DNA from: Schmidtea nova
Lineage: Eukaryota
Length of the DNA stretch: 64,000 nucleotides
NCBI GenBank assembly: GCA_044892505.1
Contig: CM097882.1
Coordinates: 377,208,001-377,272,000, forward strand
Direction: 5' to 3'
A model generated the notes under the pieces. It did no database searches and was not told where the DNA came from. It saw only the letters and a list, made by a program, of their open reading frames with translations. Shown one piece after another: positions 12,193 through 27,300 of this stretch (its first letter is position 1; each line of letters begins with the position of its first letter). The translations under genes and the position numbers were made by a program.

Positions 12193-15100
12193 CATAATTA
12201 TCTTTTTGTTTCACCTTTGATCTTTTTTATTATTAATATCAATAAATCCCATAATGGATGACTATTTAATTATTATTATTTATTTAATTATTATTATTTT
12301 ATTTAATATTTTAGTTCGTATCAATATTTTGTTTTTAAAAATAATTAAAATTAAAATTAATTATGTAGCCAATCTTTTACATATTTGTTCAGTTTTGCTA
12401 TTTCGCCGATAAAAGCAAATAGTTCGTTGTAAATATATATAATTATATAATTCACAAATTTCTGTTTAATTATAGTTTAGCTCTCAGTTTCTTGAATAAT
12501 TCTCATTTTGCTTTAACTCATTTAACGCAGTTATTTTCACAAACTATGACAAAATTATTAAATATTAAAGTCAATTAAAATTCAAAGAAATAACATTCGA
12601 CAAGATATTACTGAAATTTGTATTTATTGGAAAGATCTTTTGATCCCTCGTTTGTTAGAATGATTATAAATCAATTAAATAAAATAAAAGCACATAAAAA
12701 TGATTATTGATGATGCGATTATTACTATTGAGAAATTCGTCTTGTAGTTTTATTAAATGAGATAGCAGCAGATTTCTTATTTTTATTAATTTATCTCAGC
12801 ATGTTTAACTTTATCCTTAGCAATACATGCAATTAAAATTTCAATGTATGTAAATAAGATTTTAAATAAATTTATAGGAATATAAATTAAAATTTTTATG
12901 AAATCAAAAATATATTTTATTTTAATTTATTTAAGCATACAATTATATTTTATTATTTATTTAGATGCCTGGATTACGAAATTAAAGCCGAGGTATTTTA
13001 AGAAAATAGTTGAAGTAATAACTAATTGTTTTTATCAAGAAAAGTGTAGTTTTAAATTGTTCAAATAAGATTTAAATTAAATTACCATTTTATATAAAGA
13101 CTATAAATCAAAAATGACTTTTATATTTCACACAGATTTTTAAGTGTGCATTTAATACACACTTGAAAGGATGTGCGGATATTTGTGTGCTATATATAAA
13201 AATCAGTTTTGATCTATAGTCTTTATATTTTATTATAATTTCTGAAATTGAAATAAAGAGATCAAGGGAGAAAAAAATTAATAATGTAAAATTAAATTGT
13301 AATTATAACAAAAAATATTAATATAAAATTAGATTCTCAGCCTAGTCATTCAGTATTAAATACACAAATTTGCAGGTTTTAATGTATGATAATTATAAGG
13401 GTTTACAAAATACTCCAGAACACCAAGATCATCAATAAATATATTATTATTATTGAATCTGGAATTATCCTAGATTGATTTTATTATAGAAATAGTAATA
13501 GATAAGTCATTAAATCATTAATCTTCTTCATATTTGATAGTTTTACAATTTTTTTTCATTTTTCATACATAAGATAAAAAAATATATACTTTTGATTTAT
13601 TTTGAAAAAAACAACATTTGTCGGATGACTTATTTGTTTGTCGAAACTAGTATGCCAAATGTTGTTTTTTTCAAAAGATATTTCGAGTGATTGAAATAAT
13701 GAAGCTAAGGCAGTCGGGTGCGCTTGCAAACAGTTTCTGTTGAACACCTTTAGTGCGCAGAGGCGAAAATGAAATTCATACGCCATGTTTGCAAGTTACA
13801 GATTATCTGTAGGACCTTGCATATTCAAAGGATGTTTTATCCAGTGTACCAGGTATAGTATATAACAAAAATCTTTCGACTTTGTTTTATACTTACCTGG
13901 CGCGGAGAGAAATTTTCGCGTCGCCTGCAGAGCACTGATGAGAGCTAAAAGCTCGAAACTAGTTTGCTATTGGGGATTTGCACTGGGTGTCATAAAAAAT
14001 CACAAGCTTTACTTGTTTTGATTTATTGTTTGAAAAATTGAAAATAAATAAAACAATTGATCATTCTGGCAGTTTTAGCCAGTGGGTTGAAAATCAGGTA
14101 AAAGACCACAAAAATATAATTGGTTTTGTAGTACCATTTTAGGTAAAGTTGAATTTTATTGCTATGTTCCAATTTTAAAATAAAATTGATAAAAACTTTA
14201 ATGAAATAAAAACTTTGAGTAAATATTTTGCGATGATTCTCCCAAATGAATATATTAATTTTTAAATACTTCTATTGATCTGATTTTTCAAAAAAATACA
14301 AATTCAACTCATTAAATATTTGTTTAAATATTCTAAATATTTTTGTACACGTGACATTACCTTTGCAATTTTACTTTGTTTAAAACAGAAGTGGGCACAT
14401 ATGAGGCAAAATAGAGCCACATGTGGATACACAAATTCACTATTTTTTATTTAATTTATTTGTATATTTTCACAATTCACATATAAAAGCATAAGAAAAC
14501 ATTAAAAAATCATTATTTTAAAATTTTAATAATAAAATAAAAATAAAATTATACAGAAATAAATTTAAATAGAAAAATTACCATACACAATCACCCAAAA
14601 GGTTAAGTTGAAAAAAATGCAATAAAAAATTTTAATGGGAGCCTCACTCGACTCGACGAAGAGCCACATTTGCACACTGTTGCTTTAATATATTCCAATA
14701 GTGATATCCGTAATTATAAAATTTATTTATAATCCGTCAAAAATGGCAAAAAAATCACAAACAGGAATTATTTATGCGTGCAACCGACTTACGGACGTAC
14801 ATGCGATGGTAATTATGTAATTGAATATTGCGGCTATTGGATGTGTCTTATTTGTTTGAACAATTATAAAATTCATTTAAAAATAACTGAATCTTAATTT
14901 AAATATGCTAAAGAATAAAATATTTAAGTACTCATAAATTCATTTCCAACAGTTTCTTTCATTGTGTTCAATCAGGAATTTTACAAATAGTTTATTCTCG
15001 TCAGTTATCAATTTCTAAATCTTTATACATTTCTGTATTCAACTTATATTTTCAGATTCTAATCTTACTTCCATAAACCTGGGTTTAAATATTAAGGAAG

Positions 15101-15351: not shown

Positions 15352-18300
15352 TAATTCTTCCATCAGATAAAAACCAATTGACTTATTGCCCTTGACACAG
15401 AACAATACAACACTCTATTTGAAGAACATCTATCAAACAATGAACCGATAAACAAAATAATCTTACCTGCATCGACTCAGATTTCATACAATAAGAAACT
15501 ATCAACACTTGCAAATATTCAAATCAACCTTCAAATCCAAGATTTACTTTTTAACTGTATTGAGCACTTACCTAGTAATATGACTATGCTACGTAAAGAC
15601 CACAAAAATCCTTTAAAAGGTAGACCTCTTATATCCGCAGTAGACATTCCTTCTACAAAACTTTCTAAAGCTCTTTCAGAAATCCTTCAAAATATATTTT
15701 GCCTTTGGTTCCTTGTCATCTTAAAAACACAACTGAATTCGTCTCTGAAATTACAAATACGTCTCTTCCGTTAAACGCATGAGAATAGTACTTCTGGGGG
15801 TTTATTGATCTTTCCAATCTTTACTGATCAATTCCTCTTCACGGAGAGAATAATATTTTCGACATCGCAGCTTCTTTCTTTGAAACTCATAAAGCCAACA
15901 CTGACCTCGCAGACTTAACTAAAGAAGACTTTATAGAACTTCTAAAATTAACAATAACTTCAGATATTGTCATAATTAAAAAAAACCATTCAAACAAATT
16001 CGTGGATTAGCCATAGGTAATAACCTTTCTCCCATCTTAGCCATTTTCTACATGAACTTTATAATCTAAGATCAGATCTTTTGTTGGGGACAAAATGTTT
16101 TTCTGGAAACGATACATCGACGACATCTTCATAGTCTCCACAATCACTCTCAATCAAATCCTATCACACGCAAATTCTACTAACACCAACATACAATTCA
16201 TTTTTGAAACACCGAAAGCAGAAGATAAAAAACTGTTTTTAGATACCATGGTAAGTTTCACAAAAGGCCAAGATACACTAAATGCAAACACCGAGCTCTA
16301 TTCTAAAAGTTTACATAGTGGTCATATCCTCCCATGGAAAAGTCCTGTTCCACTTCAACGCAACATCGCATTAGTAATAGGAAAAAGAAAGAGCCATAAG
16401 AAACTGTTCAGACGCAAACAAAGTACAAGAAACATTAGAAAACTTCAAAATACAATTCCTCCAAAAAGGATACGCTGAAGAATTTGTAAAGAAATACTTC
16501 CTTAACGAAACATACCACAATAAACCTAACAATAAGAAACGCCAGAAACATAATAGCAATAGCAAACCCAGTACATATCTAAGATTACCTTTCTTAATAG
16601 CACTACAGCCAATAAGATCACCAAAATTTTTAACCAAACATATTTGCCTATCCACAGTCGTCCTACTTTCATAACCTCCGCACCGTTAAAATCACAACTT
16701 CGAAAGACACCGATTTCCAACATCTCCAAACATAAATGTCTTTGCTGTTTCACAACCAGATTCTTTGGCTTTTCCAAAAATATAGTATATAAACTTTCTT
16801 GTCAAAAATGTGACGTTACTTACATAGGAGAAACACATAGAACCTTTCGCACCGACTTAAGGAACACACTAAAAACAAAACCAGTAATTATTACGAACAC
16901 TGGGAAAAAGTACATAAAACAACTCCATCTATAGTAGAAACAAAATGTCAGATTCTAAAATTCATTACAAAGATTAGCTTCCGAGACTTTTTACATCAAA
17001 AAATACATACAGTCCTTCAACATTCAATTCGCACAAAAAAATCATGTTTAAAAAGAAAATTAAAATAAATTTATTTTCATCCAATAAAATCATTATAAAA
17101 TAAAAAATAAATAATTAAGGTTAGTATTTAGGATTAAGTTAATATAACGGTTGTAATACACACTTGATAAAGGCTGTGTCGAAATATTGTGTACTTATTT
17201 AAAGAAATTTCGATCTATAGTCATCCATTATGGGAATTATTGATATTTATATATATTCTCAAAACATTATATAAACTAAATTTTGATCTTTCTTAGAAGA
17301 AAGGATCTTATATTAGACCACTTATGGAAAAATGTTGTAAAGTGCTAATCTAGTCGAGATAAAATATATAAACTAAATTTTGATCTTTCTTAGAAGAAAG
17401 GATCTTATATTAGACCACTTATGGAAAAATGTTGTAAAGTGCTAATCTAGTCGAGATAAAATCAGACAAAAAGTAATGAACACACTTAAGTAATTAATAA
17501 TCAGATAAGATTGTCCAAATAAGCTAAAATTTCTCTAGTTATAGAAATTGTTTTTTTAAATCAAATCATTTTTCAATTTAAGAGACAGGTATTGTAATTT
17601 TGACTATGTATCTCCAATATTATACTAATTATTTTTTTAATAAGAATAGTATTCAACAAAACCATATATTAAAATAATTAAACAAATAAAGACTACTCTA
17701 CAAACTATATATTTATTGTCCCAGATATAAATTGAATGGCAAATACATCAGACACAACAACGAAGGCCACGAACTTTTGAGGTGATTTACAGGCAATATA
17801 AATTTCTTTTTATTTTTGATGATTAATAACACAATTTAATATCCTTGTTACCGATAGAGTTTGCAAATTATAAATAAAAACTAAGTAATGTTATGTTCCA
17901 ATTTAAGAACCATTATTAATAATACTATACAAGCCGTGTGTTTTCACATTTGTATTGTACACTTAGTACTAAGTTTATTCTCTGAGGTTTCCATGGTTTA
18001 TTCTATCAGCCAATAATTATTGACGAATAAATGTAACAGTTAACAAGGCTATTATATACATGATGTATATTAGTTATATTATTGTGTATATTATTGCGTA
18101 TATTATTGTGTATTTTATCGTGTATATTATTGATATATTATTGGTTATTATAGTGATAAAACGTCTGTTAATTTTATTAAATAGGAGTCAAATATAAGCT
18201 ATTTTTTGATATACATCTTTAAAATAATCTAAAATATGCTTCAAATATTTCAACAAAGAAAACATTAAATGTTCCTTACAATGTTCCGTAGGTTTTACAA

Positions 18301-24300: not shown

Positions 24301-27300
24301 TTCGACAAAATACTGACCCACAAAGAATGTAGGATTTCTACCATAGATCAACACTTCCATATTTACAGAGAATAAAGAATAGATAAACGATTTACCAAAG
24401 AAGTGTACAATTCTGAAAAATGCGCAATATGTATAGATGTCATAAATAGTCACAGATACCACGATAATGATATCAAGAAAATAAATTCCAATCTGAGAAG
24501 ACAGAAAGAATTTCAAAAGAAAAAGTATTTCCACCTTCGAATCCTATTTACTAATAACCAAATAAATTTTAAGATCATCAAAAAGCTTAATTTCATTGAC
24601 TTCCAATTCGTTTAGCATATAGATCTAGGACAATCAAGTACACTCTGGCGAACAAAACAAGAAAAGATAATACTTATTAAATGGAAAACTGCTAGACACA
24701 TAAGGAAATATGCTTCCAAAAGAACGTTTTCTATAATATCATGTTAAGAAATGCAAAGAAATTAACATTTAAAGCATCCTTAGGATTTTGTATCAAAGAA
24801 TTAGAAAGTATTTGCATCCTGGTGAAAAATAATATTTATACAGACATATTCAACAGTGTCAGATAGAAAAATGAAAAACTTTAATATCAGATAATATATT
24901 GACCAGAAAAAAACAATAAAAGAATCTCCGACTTAAGGAGGCTATTTTCATTTGAGACCAATACCCAAAATTCAACTTTAAAAAAGATGCCACTGAAATT
25001 GCCCACCTTCTAATTTGTTAATAAGATGTTAAATTTAGAAAAAAACCTTTTGAAGAAATTTTTAATAATTTTAAGTTTAAAACATTTTTTCACAAAGCCA
25101 AAAGAGAAAAGGGGGAAGAAGCCAAAATGAAAAAAGAAAGTAAAGAAATATTTTAATTTTATAGAGATTTTATCATAAAATTAAGTTAGTTATAAACTTA
25201 AATTTAATAAAAGGTTAAAATATAATATAAATATATATTTGAAAGTTTACAGATTATCTGATTACCTTGAATATTCAAGTGATGTGATATTCAGTGTACC
25301 AGGAAAAGTACTCAATAAAGTTATTTCAACTTTGTTTTATACTTACCTGGCGTGAAGAGCAATCTTCGGGTCTTATGTATAGCACTGACGAGAGCCCAAA
25401 GCCTGAAACTAGTCTCTTATTAGGAATTTGCATTGGGTATCACAAAGCTTTACCTTTTCTTAATTAATAAATAATAATGGTTATCAAATATTTAAATTAA
25501 ATTAAATGATAATAAAAATACACACTTAAAAATGCTGTTCCTAAAGTTCGTGTGCCTTAAAAAAAGAAATTTGATCTATAATCTTTATTTAAAAAATTTA
25601 AATTAAAAAAATTAATTTAAATCTTTTTTAAATATGTAAATATTTCTTTTTCTTTCAATTTCTCAAAGATTTATATATTCAAAACCTTCTTTTCATAATT
25701 TTTGATTTTTTCTAAATTAATAATAATTGAAAAGATTTCCGAATAGATAGAGAAGTGATAAAAGATGAAAATATAACAGTAAAGTTTATTTAAAATTTAA
25801 AACTGTCAAGTTTACAGTGTAATATACTTTTATAATTCGAATGCTATTACGTGCTTGTTAAGGTGTCATTTTCATTTTGTTCCTATCCATTCGTTTTCGA
25901 TGCAAAAGCAAAATCCAAATTGTTGCAAGTCGAAGCTGGCTTGTTTATGCGAAATGCAGTTCTAGAAACTCATACAAATCTGATTATGTCCATACTCAAT
26001 GCTCAAGAGTCAGGCATTATCAACATGGAAACTCCGTTTTTTGAAATCGGCGTTAATCGAGAAACAGTTCTTCAAGACACATTAAAAGCACTTGAAAAAG
26101 CATCTCAAAAGGAATTTAAGAAGCCATTAAAAGTTTATTTACTTAATATATAAATTGCTTTTTTAAACTAATACTTTTAGATTTCCTTTTCAAATGAAGA
26201 AGCAGTCGATGACGGCGGAGTTGTGAAGGTAATACTTTCGATAATTATTGTTTAAATAAAAATATTATATTTTATAATTTAATTATTCAAAAAATAATTC
26301 GGAATCCTTATTACAAAAATAAATTATTTCATCTATATTTTTAATGAAAACCTTGAAAGATCCAAATACGTATAATAAAAATACGTAAAAAATGTGCATA
26401 TTAATCTCAATAAAAATATTTCAATATAAAACGGTATATTGACGAGCTAGAGAGTGATCCACAATATAAAACTTAGAATTGAATCAGAATGTTCACAAGG
26501 GTATTTTGACGTTTTTAAATACAAAAAAAGCTCTAAAAACTATTATGATCTCCAACAAAGTGTGAAAATTACTTAAATTGCTATTTAACATTAACTAAAA
26601 TTATTAAGATTAAAACTAAACATTTCATTTTTTTTCTTTATTTAAACGTTTTTCTAAATGACATTTATTCATTTTTACTAAATAATTACTATCTTTGTAC
26701 GCGTGGTTAAATTTAAATATTTTTTTAGTTTAACTCAAATTTTTGTATTTTTCAATTTTAAAAAGTTTTTCTCTTATTCTAAATAACTTATTTTATTTTA
26801 TAATTAAAATTAATTTTATGGTGTGATGTTATTTTAACTAAGTTTTATATGTTTTCCCTGCCTAAGTTGTGTTACATTTTAGGCAAAGGAGTTCAAAAAT
26901 ATTTTATTTTTTTATGTTATTTGTTATACAGATGGAAAAAAAACTTTTATAAATTTTTAAAGAACTTTTTTACTTTTTTACTTCCGAAATTATTTGTGCC
27001 TTGTTTATTTATTTTATTTATCAGAATTAATAAAATTATAATTTAGATTAAATTTTAATTATTTCATTGACTTAAAATAGCTTTTTAAAAGTTCTGATTT
27101 ACAAAAATTGTATACTGCCGGAAGAGTGCTGATTTTAATGAATTCTCGGAGGCTAGTCGCTCTATAGAAATCTTTTTAAGGAATTTGGTATTTTGTATTT
27201 GTCACAATTTCCATTGTTAAAATACTAGAAAGTGCTTTAAAAATTATTTAATACTAATAATACTCTTTAAAAAAAATTTATTTATTTTATTTAGATTTTT

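What the first reader, a model, noticed from the sequence alone, without database searches (positions are those of the whole stretch)
13793..14012. ~215-bp multi-hairpin RNA element with a hammerhead, two dispersed copies
Seen: shared with 25243-25453 are a long hairpin (CCAGG...CCTGG, inner AACAAA or AATAAA/TTTGTT), a 10-bp GNRA-capped hairpin (GAAA vs GCAA loop) and a type I hammerhead; no ORF. Differences between the copies largely preserve pairing. Inference: a retrozyme-like non-autonomous RNA or an unusually structured PLE terminus.
Basis: partly seen in the sequence, partly recalled or inferred. Interest (0 to 1): 0.75.

Follow-up and report, generated by a model that had tools for sequence, protein, structure and literature searches.

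The report
Hammerhead retrozyme repeat, Penelope-style insertions
The two stretches are decaying copies of an abundant, non-coding 382-base repeat with a self-cleaving hammerhead ribozyme, spread the way Penelope-like retrotransposons insert, so it is an ordinary member of the published animal "retrozyme" class.

Summary
They are not a two-copy, 215-bp element. They are 5'-truncated copies of a 382-bp repeat with at least 1131 to 2577 first-look matches on all three chromosomes. The repeat also forms tandem arrays, one with more than 7 units at 99% identity.

- **Ribozyme:** the family consensus matches Rfam Hammerhead_1 over its full length (27.6 bits, E 1.4e-4, below the gathering score of 34). 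Helix III is only a palindromic ACUAGU, the dimer-dependent metazoan type.
- **Coding and folding:** the unit has no ORF. The monomer folds far better than shuffles (z = -7.2).
- **Covariation:** there is none across 60 copies (94.4% paired, the same as shuffles).
- **Insertion marks:** dispersed copies show variable 5' truncation, partial tandems, head-to-head twins, (ATT)n or (TA)n targets, and two 3'-end classes about 38 nt apart. That gap is the published Penelope "tail".
- **Not a pLTR:** flanks are unique and no PLE ORF is attached. An abundant RT plus GIY-YIG Penelope-like element is present in the genome, but its 3' region has no similarity to the unit.

Copy A keeps the catalytic core with weakening private changes. 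Copy B is degraded. No RNA data could be had.

Verdict: a new member of the known non-LTR retrozyme class. This scan already found the same family on other DNA of this genome.

The parts
13600..13639 (-). Inverted 'tail' piece. It is the reverse complement of unit positions 59-95, that is, a head-to-head arm cut down to the 38-nt tail.
   Evidence: Blast of the unit on the window gives 90% over 40 bp. The same piece lies in direct orientation at the 3' end of other copies.
13640..13655 (+). 16-nt filler at the 5' junction (GTCGAAACTAGTATGC). It resembles the end of the hammerhead, unit 370-382 plus 1-3.
   Evidence: Read from the sequence. Few other loci share it (coverage dip).
13663..14018 (+). 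Copy A body: unit 82 to 382, then 1 to 57. It is 96% identical to the young-subfamily consensus, crosses one cleavage site, and ends at the first class of 3' ends.
13797..13811 (+). Small 6-bp hairpin (UACAGA UUA UCUGUA).
   Evidence: MFE fold; 98% of cells paired in 60 copies.
13838..13847 (+). 5' strand of a long-range helix. It pairs with 13980-13989 and encloses the two hairpins and the hammerhead.
   Evidence: MFE folds; RNAalifold keeps this helix; 96.9% of cells paired.
13849..13900 (+). Long imperfect hairpin, CCAGG...CCUGG.
   Evidence: 92% of cells paired
13901..13920 (+). 8-bp hairpin with a GAAA loop. The older subfamily and copy B have GCAA.
13923..13976 (+). Type I hammerhead: outer and inner helix I; core CUGAUGA at 13935-41; helix II at 13942-54; GAAA at 13955-58; palindrome ACUAGU at 13958-63. 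The cleavage site follows 13964.

Private changes in this copy:
- 13964: U in place of the family's C.
- 13930: G breaks one helix I pair.
- 13923: G breaks one outer pair.
   Evidence: The contigs of four runs carry T, T and C at 13923, 13930 and 13964 (table 3).
13980..13989 (+). 3' strand of the long-range helix.
25235..25460 (+). Copy B. It belongs to the older subfamily, is 5'-truncated at unit 204, and is 88% identical to that subfamily's consensus. It ends at the first class of 3' ends, after GCTTTACCTTTT.

Hammerhead: core CUGACGA at 25385-91, site 25414|25415. Helix II has one mismatch and one wobble at its base. Helix I has one mismatch.

Best explanation
Both stretches are dead copies of a non-autonomous retroelement of the animal non-LTR retrozyme kind.

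**Shown**
- The family has a 382-bp non-coding unit with one canonical metazoan type I hammerhead: helix I 6 bp, helix II 4 bp, helix III reduced to the palindrome ACUAGU.
- It exists as tandem arrays and as thousands of dispersed copies.
- Dispersed copies carry the Penelope-like insertion marks:
  - variable 5' truncation;
  - copies longer than one unit;
  - head-to-head inverted twins;
  - insertion into (ATT)n or (TA)n microsatellites;
  - 3' ends at two sites about 38 nt apart (unit ~48-65 and ~86-110), so a 38-nt 'tail' sits at one end only.
- Every dispersed copy reads through the cleavage site.
- An abundant RT plus GIY-YIG PLE with long open frames is present and also ends in (ATT)n.

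**Inferred**
- Array transcripts are cut by hammerheads that pair through their palindromic helix III. This releases 382-nt monomers, which a host RNA ligase closes into highly folded circles.
- A PLE protein nicks AT-rich DNA and starts reverse transcription at either of two internal sites on an uncleaved multimer or a circle. That would explain why copies cross the cleavage site and can exceed one unit.

**The window's copies**
- Copy A has a single, weakened hammerhead and cannot release a monomer on its own.
- Copy B is older and its ribozyme is damaged.
For: - **Tandem array:** period 382, 7.1 copies, 99% identity.
- **Copy number:** 1131 and 2577 first-look candidates with the two queries. 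Hits lie on C1, C2 and C3 at 95-97% identity with the copy A query and 79-87% with the copy B query.
- **Flanks:** unique beyond the unit.
- **Architecture:** mapping of the unit on 60 loci shows 5' truncation, copies of 1.2-1.65 units and inverted twins.
- **3' ends:** bimodal. 32 copies fall in class 1 and 20 in class 2, with no copies ending at unit 66-85. The twins I could score carry one arm of each class.
- **Published match:**
  - PMC8557442 describes the 30-40 bp PLE tail, the inverted twins and the microsatellite bias.
  - PMC11167929 describes two internal RT start sites that define the tail, and a 5'-ATT-3' cleavage preference.
- **Ribozyme:**
  - Rfam Hammerhead_1 covers model positions 1-45 of 45 at 27.6 bits, E 1.4e-4, on the array copy.
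  - The architecture equals the 'canonical metazoan type I' of PMC4209133.
  - The core is intact in 29 of 30 young copies and 13 of 30 older ones.
- **Folding and coding:** monomer fold -119.7 kcal/mol, z = -7.2. GC is 36.9% and there is no ORF.
- **Resident PLE:** RVT_1 followed by GIY-YIG in 598-aa open frames. There are 3407 first-look GIY-YIG candidates, with open frames up to 856 aa.
- **Class definition:** tandem 150-450 bp units, type I hammerhead, low GC, circRNAs (PMC7229834). The link to PLEs is in bioRxiv 10.64898/2026.07.22.740005.
Against: - No RNA evidence. The only runs found are contigs of unknown kind from one study, and they cannot show ends or circles.
- Self-cleavage is untested, and the hammerhead scores below Rfam's gathering threshold.
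- No covariation supports the non-ribozyme hairpins.
- The autonomous partner is not identified by sequence. The abundant PLE's 3' region is unrelated to the unit and carries a different, non-canonical (U3) mini-hammerhead-like motif.
- Only about 75 copies in 60 loci were examined. The loci were chosen by similarity to the 3' half, which hides copies that lack it.
Confidence: 0.85

Rival explanations
1. It is the ordinary pseudo-LTR (terminus) of an autonomous Penelope-like element. The copies seen would be solo or truncated ends of coding elements.
For: PLE pLTRs carry hammerheads near the 3' end (PMC4209133, PMC8557442). PLEs with RT plus GIY-YIG are very abundant in this genome. The insertion marks are the same as those of PLEs.
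Against: The unit repeats head to tail every 382 bp with no coding capacity. Copies longer than one unit continue into the same 382-bp unit, not into an ORF. Flanks are unique or microsatellite. Thirty PLE endonuclease loci, each with 1.5 kb on either side, show no similarity to the unit and no canonical hammerhead.
Confidence: 0.04
2. It is a plain satellite DNA that spreads by unequal exchange or segmental duplication. The hammerhead would be a passenger with no retrotransposition.
For: Tandem arrays at 99% identity exist. Classic hammerhead satellites in newts and schistosomes were first described this way (PMC7229834).
Against: - Thousands of isolated copies lie on all three chromosomes.
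- 3' ends fall at two defined sites, and 5' ends vary.
- There are head-to-head twins, and targets are microsatellites.

These are marks of target-primed reverse transcription, not of DNA-level amplification.
Confidence: 0.05
3. It is a SINE-like element mobilised by a LINE (non-LTR) reverse transcriptase, not by a PLE.
For: It is short, non-coding, 5'-truncated and inserted in AT-rich DNA. PMC7229834 originally left open whether LINEs or PLEs do the job.
Against: There is no tRNA-like head (aragorn finds none) and no poly(A) tail. The two 3'-end classes about 38 nt apart, the tail at one end only, the inverted twins and the partial tandems are described as specific to PLEs (PMC8557442, PMC11167929).
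Confidence: 0.05

Closest known systems
Metazoan non-LTR retrozymes (Cervera and de la Pena 2020, PMC7229834). The class includes the newt/axolotl satellite 2 repeats and the Schistosoma Sm-alpha-type hammerhead repeats.
   Same: - Type I hammerhead.
- 150-450 bp non-coding unit (here 382 bp).
- Tandem arrays plus dispersed copies.
- Low GC (36.9%).
- Helix III of one or two pairs under a palindromic loop, which predicts action as a dimer, as in the axolotl HHR_Amex1 type.
- Strongly folded monomer.
   Different: The sequence is species-specific. Expression and circularity were not shown here. The dispersed copies show an unusually clean PLE 'tail' pattern that the 2020 paper did not describe.
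Penelope-like elements and their non-autonomous derivatives (PMC8557442; PMC11167929; bioRxiv 10.64898/2026.07.22.740005)
   Same: - 5' truncation.
- Partial tandems.
- Inverted 5' twins.
- A 30-40 bp tail between two reverse-transcription start sites.
- ATT or microsatellite targets.
- A hammerhead a few tens of nucleotides upstream of the 3' end.
   Different: The unit has no RT/EN ORF and no detectable sequence similarity to the abundant resident PLE. Its hammerhead is the canonical type I (helix I 6 bp, helix II 4 bp). It is not the 'min-HHR' with a long helix II that is typical of PLE pLTRs.
Plant LTR retrozymes (PMC4918200)
   Same: Non-autonomous, hammerhead-bounded, and predicted to make circular RNA.
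   Different: Plant elements have type III hammerheads inside true LTRs, a PBS and PPT, GC above 55% and a size of 600-1000 nt. Ty3/Gypsy machinery mobilises them. None of this applies here.

Membership tests
Hammerhead ribozyme, type I (Rfam RF00163) | Conserved core CUGANGA ... GAAA, with a non-G residue at the cleavage site after a U. | tested here: met
   - Family consensus: CUGAUGA, GAAA, GUC|.
- Copy A: CUGAUGA, GAAA, GUU|.
- Copy B: CUGACGA, GAAA, GUC|.
Hammerhead ribozyme, type I (Rfam RF00163) | Three helices round the core with helix I open (5' and 3' ends in helix I). | tested here: met
   Helix I AUAGCA/UGCUAU (6 bp), helix II GAGC/GCUC (4 bp), helix III A-U and C-G within the palindrome ACUAGU. 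The Rfam alignment covers model positions 1-45 of 45. In 60 copies, 93-96% of helix cells are paired.
Hammerhead ribozyme, type I (Rfam RF00163) | Score at or above Rfam's gathering threshold (34 bits). | tested here: not met
   - Array copy: 27.6 bits, E 1.4e-4.
- Window: no gathering hit.
- Copy A: only Hammerhead_3 at 15.6 bits.
- Copy B: none.

The shortfall lies in the very short helix III. This is a known trait of metazoan hammerheads (PMC4209133).
Hammerhead ribozyme, type I (Rfam RF00163) | Self-cleavage at the predicted site. | not testable with these tools
   This needs in vitro transcription of monomeric and dimeric constructs.
Metazoan non-LTR retrozyme | Short tandem repeats (monomer 150-450 bp), each with one type I hammerhead. 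| tested here: met
   L030 has period 382, 7.1 copies, 99% identity and one hammerhead per unit. Partial tandems occur at many loci.
Metazoan non-LTR retrozyme | Non-coding, low GC, no LTR/PBS/PPT. | tested here: met
   The longest stop-to-stop frame is 88 codons. GC is 36.9%. The copies have no terminal repeats other than the tandem units themselves.
Metazoan non-LTR retrozyme | Expressed as linear and circular monomeric RNA. | not testable with these tools
   No run on record as RNA holds the unit. The four holders are contigs of unknown kind.
PLE-type insertion (mobilised by a Penelope-like RT/GIY-YIG protein) | 5' truncation, partial tandems and an adjacent inverted 5'-truncated copy. | tested here: met
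   5' starts are spread over the whole unit. Copies of 503-631 bp occur. Twins are seen in L005, L006, L008, L009, L012, L015, L021, L023 and L054, and in the window itself.
PLE-type insertion (mobilised by a Penelope-like RT/GIY-YIG protein) | A 30-40 bp 'tail' between two reverse-transcription start sites, present at one end only. | tested here: met
   3' ends fall at unit ~48-65 and ~86-110, with no copies ending at unit 66-85. In twins one arm has the tail and the other lacks it. In the window the tail is the inverted piece 13600-13639, and the body ends at unit 57.
PLE-type insertion (mobilised by a Penelope-like RT/GIY-YIG protein) | AT-rich, ATT or microsatellite target. | tested here: met
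   Most flanks are (ATT)n/(TAA)n or (TA)n. The resident PLE copies also end in (ATT)n. The two window copies lie in AT-rich DNA, not in clean microsatellites.
PLE-type insertion (mobilised by a Penelope-like RT/GIY-YIG protein) | Sequence similarity of the 3' end to an autonomous partner. | tested here: not met
   There is no significant similarity between the unit and 30 PLE endonuclease loci. Only one PLE family's 3' region was read in full.
PLE pseudo-LTR | Flanks, or is continuous with, an RT plus GIY-YIG ORF. | tested here: not met
   Flanks are unique or microsatellite in 60 loci. Between and around the window copies no ORF exceeds 229 aa.
SINE | Pol III (tRNA, 7SL or 5S) head and an A-rich or LINE-derived tail. 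| tested here: not met
   aragorn finds no tRNA-like sequence in a trimer of the unit. Rfam gives no 7SL or 5S hit. There is no poly(A) at the 3' ends.

The most novel reading that the evidence does not exclude
The circular retrozyme RNA may itself be the template for integration. PLE reverse transcriptase starts at internal sites and needs no 3' end (PMC11167929), so it could load onto the closed 382-nt circle at unit ~57 or ~95 and run round it. That would give copies that always cross the cleavage site and can exceed one unit.

The rule seen here, that each head-to-head twin has one arm from each start site, would then reflect a protein dimer copying from both start sites at the two strands of one staggered cut. 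The conserved junction closed by the long-range helix across the ligation site would be its recognition element.
Probability: 0.2. Interest if true: 0.6.

Novelty: new member of a known kind. Interest (0 to 1): 0.25.

Why it matters
The finding adds a species-specific family to a published class and does not open a new one. Its modest value is that the dispersed copies tie an invertebrate retrozyme to Penelope-like machinery by insertion marks: two start sites about 38 nt apart, the tail at one end of twins, and ATT-repeat targets. The earlier link rested on co-occurrence or phylogeny. The young subfamily, with 29 of 30 intact ribozymes, and the 99%-identical arrays would make a convenient system. 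It could be used to test whether circles or multimers are the template for a PLE reverse transcriptase.

Tried and rejected
- **Rfam, whole window at gathering threshold:** nothing.
- **RNAalifold on 60 copies:** a poor consensus structure (-14.3 kcal/mol, covariation term -0.43). It kept only the long-range helix and missed the hairpins. I therefore scored my own 58-pair structure. It showed no covariation above shuffles.
- **Autonomous partner:**
  - A GIY-YIG Pfam search of the genome gave 30 loci.
  - None showed similarity to the unit beyond 15-28 bp chance-level matches.
  - None had a canonical CUGANGA...GAAA motif with a paired helix II.
The 5' 750 bp of the abundant PLE and the rarer PLE families were not examined.
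- **Expression:**
  - The run search found four runs of one study, all Logan contigs of unknown kind, and none on record as RNA.
  - Laying them showed only that the repeat is vastly over-represented relative to its flanks.
  - It also showed that the window copy's three hammerhead changes are private.
  - No starts, ends or circle junctions can be read from contigs.
  - A single-contig joint skipping 13555-14016 (22 letters on its short side) is too weak to call an empty-site allele.
- **Other readings considered and dropped:**
  - A tRNA-derived SINE head: none found.
  - A ribozyme on the opposite strand, which would suggest an ambisense viroid-like element: Rfam found none at E up to 10.
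- **Left undone:** I did not try to name the organism. The run names are coded and a costly protein search was not justified.
Full report
**Observation**

The two stretches align at 84% mean column identity over about 215 bp.
- The long CCAGG...CCUGG hairpin lies at window 13849-13900 and 25299-25350.
- The GNRA-capped hairpin lies at 13901-13920 (GAAA loop) and 25351-25370 (GCAA loop).
- The hammerhead core is CUGAUGA at 13935-41 with GAAA at 13955-58. In copy B the core is CUGACGA at 25385-91.

Both stretches fold better than shuffles (z = -3.9 each). Rfam gives no gathering-level match anywhere in the window. With relaxed thresholds, copy A gets only Hammerhead_3 at 15.6 bits, E 1.7, and copy B gets nothing.

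**What the copies belong to**

A search of the window's own genome (1.25 Gb, three very large chromosomes) used 13793-14012 as the query. It gave 45 scored matches out of 1131 first-look candidates, most of them full length at 95-97% identity, on all three chromosomes. The copy B region as query gave 2577 candidates at 79-87%.

One locus, L030, holds a head-to-tail array of period 382 with 7.1 copies at 99% identity, running off the locus. I numbered the 382-bp unit from the predicted cleavage site.
- **Copy A** is unit 82-382 followed by 1-57 (window 13663-14018). Upstream lies a 40-bp piece, 13600-13639, which is the reverse complement of unit 59-95.
- **Copy B** is unit 204-382 followed by 1-32, plus a short end.

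Its GC is 36.9%, against 27.8% for the window.

**The ribozyme**

In array and young copies the motif reads AUAGCA-CUGAUGA-GAGC CAAAA GCUC-GAAA-C UA G U C|UGCUAU.
- Helix I has 6 bp and helix II has 4 bp.
- Helix III is only A-U and C-G inside the palindrome ACUAGU.

On the array copy, Rfam Hammerhead_1 aligns over its whole length (positions 1-45 of 45) at 27.6 bits, E 1.4e-4. This is under the gathering score of 34, and the loss is in helix III.

This is the 'canonical metazoan type I' architecture of PMC4209133: helix I 6 bp, helix II 4 bp, and helix III of 1-2 bp under a small palindromic loop. Such ribozymes are known to be nearly inactive as monomers and active as dimers (PMC4209133; PMC7229834 for axolotl).

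The core and helices are intact in 29 of 30 young copies and 13 of 30 older ones.
- **Copy A** keeps the core. It has U for C at the cleavage position (13964), a G that breaks one helix I pair (13930) and a G that breaks an outer pair (13923).
- The contigs of four sequencing runs carry C, T and T at these places, so the three changes are private to this copy (table 3).
- **Copy B** has a mismatch and a wobble in helix II and a mismatch in helix I.

**Structure outside the ribozyme**

The 382-nt monomer folds to -119.7 kcal/mol, against -82.7 ± 5.1 for shuffles (z = -7.2). A long-range helix (13838-47 with 13980-89 in copy A) closes a junction that holds the long hairpin, the GNRA hairpin and the hammerhead. 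The cleavage and ligation site therefore sits inside a closed domain.

I aligned 60 distinct copies (A2) and scored a 58-pair structure.
- 94.4% of cells pair, against 32-46% in slid registers. Shuffled partners give the same 94.4%.
- Only 3 pairs show a double change, against 2.5 expected.
- Between A and B, 20 pairs differ. About half stay paired in both copies and one change is compensatory.

So there is thermodynamic support but no covariation support. This is what neutrally decaying insertions of a young family would give. The ten differences between the two subfamily consensus sequences spare the ribozyme and keep a GNRA loop, but they are too few to test.

**How the copies got there**

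Sequence beyond the unit is not shared between loci. Mapping the unit on 60 loci shows four things.
- 5' starts are scattered over the whole unit.
- Copies of 503-631 bp run on into a second unit.
- Flanks are mostly (ATT)n/(TAA)n or (TA)n.

I took 62 segments downstream of a hammerhead.
- 9 continue into the next unit.
- 32 end at unit ~48-65. This count includes older copies, which lack an 11-bp duplication and end after GCTTTACTTGTT.
- 20 end at ~86-110, and 1 ends at 119.
- No copy ends at unit 66-85.

In the twins that could be scored (L005, L006, L008, L009, L015, L054, and the window's own copy), one arm ends in each class. With class frequencies of about 0.6 and 0.4, seven of seven has a chance of about 0.006. 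That figure is my own arithmetic on a small sample.

These are the published marks of Penelope-like elements.
- PMC8557442 describes 5' truncation, partial tandems, adjacent inverted copies, a 30-40 bp tail at one end and a microsatellite bias.
- PMC11167929 traces the tail to two adjacent internal start sites of reverse transcription, and reports cleavage at 5'-ATT-3'.

In the window, the tail is the inverted piece 13600-13639. A 16-nt filler resembling the end of the hammerhead follows it (13640-55). The body then ends at unit 57.

**The likely driver**

A Pfam GIY-YIG search of the genome gave 3407 first-look candidates. Many score identically, and open frames run up to 856 aa. Some copies are spaced about 3.1 kb apart, and some lie in inverted pairs. 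Two open frames have RVT_1 followed by a C-terminal GIY-YIG domain, which marks a canonical endonuclease-bearing PLE.

Its copies end in (ATT)n, the same targets as the 382-bp repeat. Its 3' untranslated region has no similarity to the unit. It carries a mini-hammerhead-like motif (helix II 6-7 bp, AAAUUU palindrome) with U instead of C at core position 3 in all eight copies aligned.

So a suitable machine is present and looks recently active, but a partner is not shown by sequence. I could not fetch more of the genome to look at other PLE families.

**Mechanism**

Shown: the unit, its arrays, the ribozyme architecture, the insertion marks, and the resident PLE.

Inferred from established knowledge of retrozymes (PMC7229834) and PLEs (PMC11167929):
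1. Array transcripts are cut by hammerheads paired through ACUAGU.
2. Monomers with 5'-OH and 2',3'-cyclic phosphate ends are closed by a tRNA-type ligase.
3. A PLE protein nicks ATT-rich DNA and starts cDNA synthesis at unit ~57 or ~95.

Every dispersed copy runs from that start back across the cleavage site. The template therefore cannot be a cleaved linear monomer. It must be an uncleaved multimer or a re-closed circle. Internal initiation would let a circle serve, and rolling round it would give the copies that exceed one unit. That last step is a hypothesis.

**What could not be settled**

No RNA data were available. The only runs holding the unit are contigs of unknown kind from one study. 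They show only that the repeat is over-represented by four to five orders of magnitude relative to its flanks. Cleavage and circularity are untested.

**Comparison and verdict**

The element meets the sequence-level definition of a metazoan non-LTR retrozyme: a type I hammerhead, a tandem unit of 150-450 bp, no coding capacity and low GC. It carries PLE insertion marks. It fails the test for a pLTR, because no ORF is attached, and the test for a SINE, because it has no pol III head and no A-tail.

It is a new member of a known kind. Earlier notes of this scan on other pieces of the same genome (s1-411042, s1-408929, s1-396006, s1-381105) reached the same reading. I tested it independently here and it holds. 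The two window copies are themselves inert relics.

Noticed in passing
L082 (reverse strand, oriented positions 1-2385); likewise L085, L076, L075, L080, L083, L087, L078: A very abundant canonical Penelope-like element. It has RVT_1 followed by a C-terminal GIY-YIG domain, open frames up to 856 aa and a spacing of about 3.1 kb in tandems. There are 3407 first-look GIY-YIG candidates, and copies are 91-97% identical to one another. The copies end in (ATT)n microsatellites.
   Followed up: partly
L082 reverse strand, oriented ~2228-2275 (3' UTR, about 125 nt before the element's end): A mini-hammerhead-like motif: AGAGA-UUGACGA-GGAUUAU UUG AUAAUC-GAAA-AUUU-UCUC. Core position 3 is U, not C, in all eight aligned copies, while position 8 stays G. 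Whether it can cleave is unknown. An earlier scan note (s1-376190) reports a U3-A8 variant elsewhere in this genome.
   Followed up: partly
L084:17-44: An isolated hammerhead-like fragment (CTGATGAGAGCCAAATGAGCTGTAAAC) about 1.5 kb from a PLE endonuclease remnant. It is 86% like the retrozyme core over 28 bp, with GUAAAC in place of CGAAAC. It is probably a decayed copy of a related family.
   Followed up: no
window 13596-14035, as laid in runs X1-X4: Summed contig depth on the repeat is about 10^4 times the flank depth in run X2 and about 10^5 times in X1, X3 and X4. Nextera-type adapter ends appear in loose ends. The run kind is unknown, so the tenfold difference between runs is unexplained.
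   Followed up: no
window 17268-17462: A perfect two-copy tandem duplication of a 97-bp unit (100% identity).
   Followed up: no
L030:2703-2789 and the flanks of many loci: The 7-unit array and most dispersed copies abut (TAA)n/(ATT)n or (TA)n microsatellites. These repeats seem to be the main landing pads for both the retrozyme and the PLE in this genome.
   Followed up: partly
   Followed up: no
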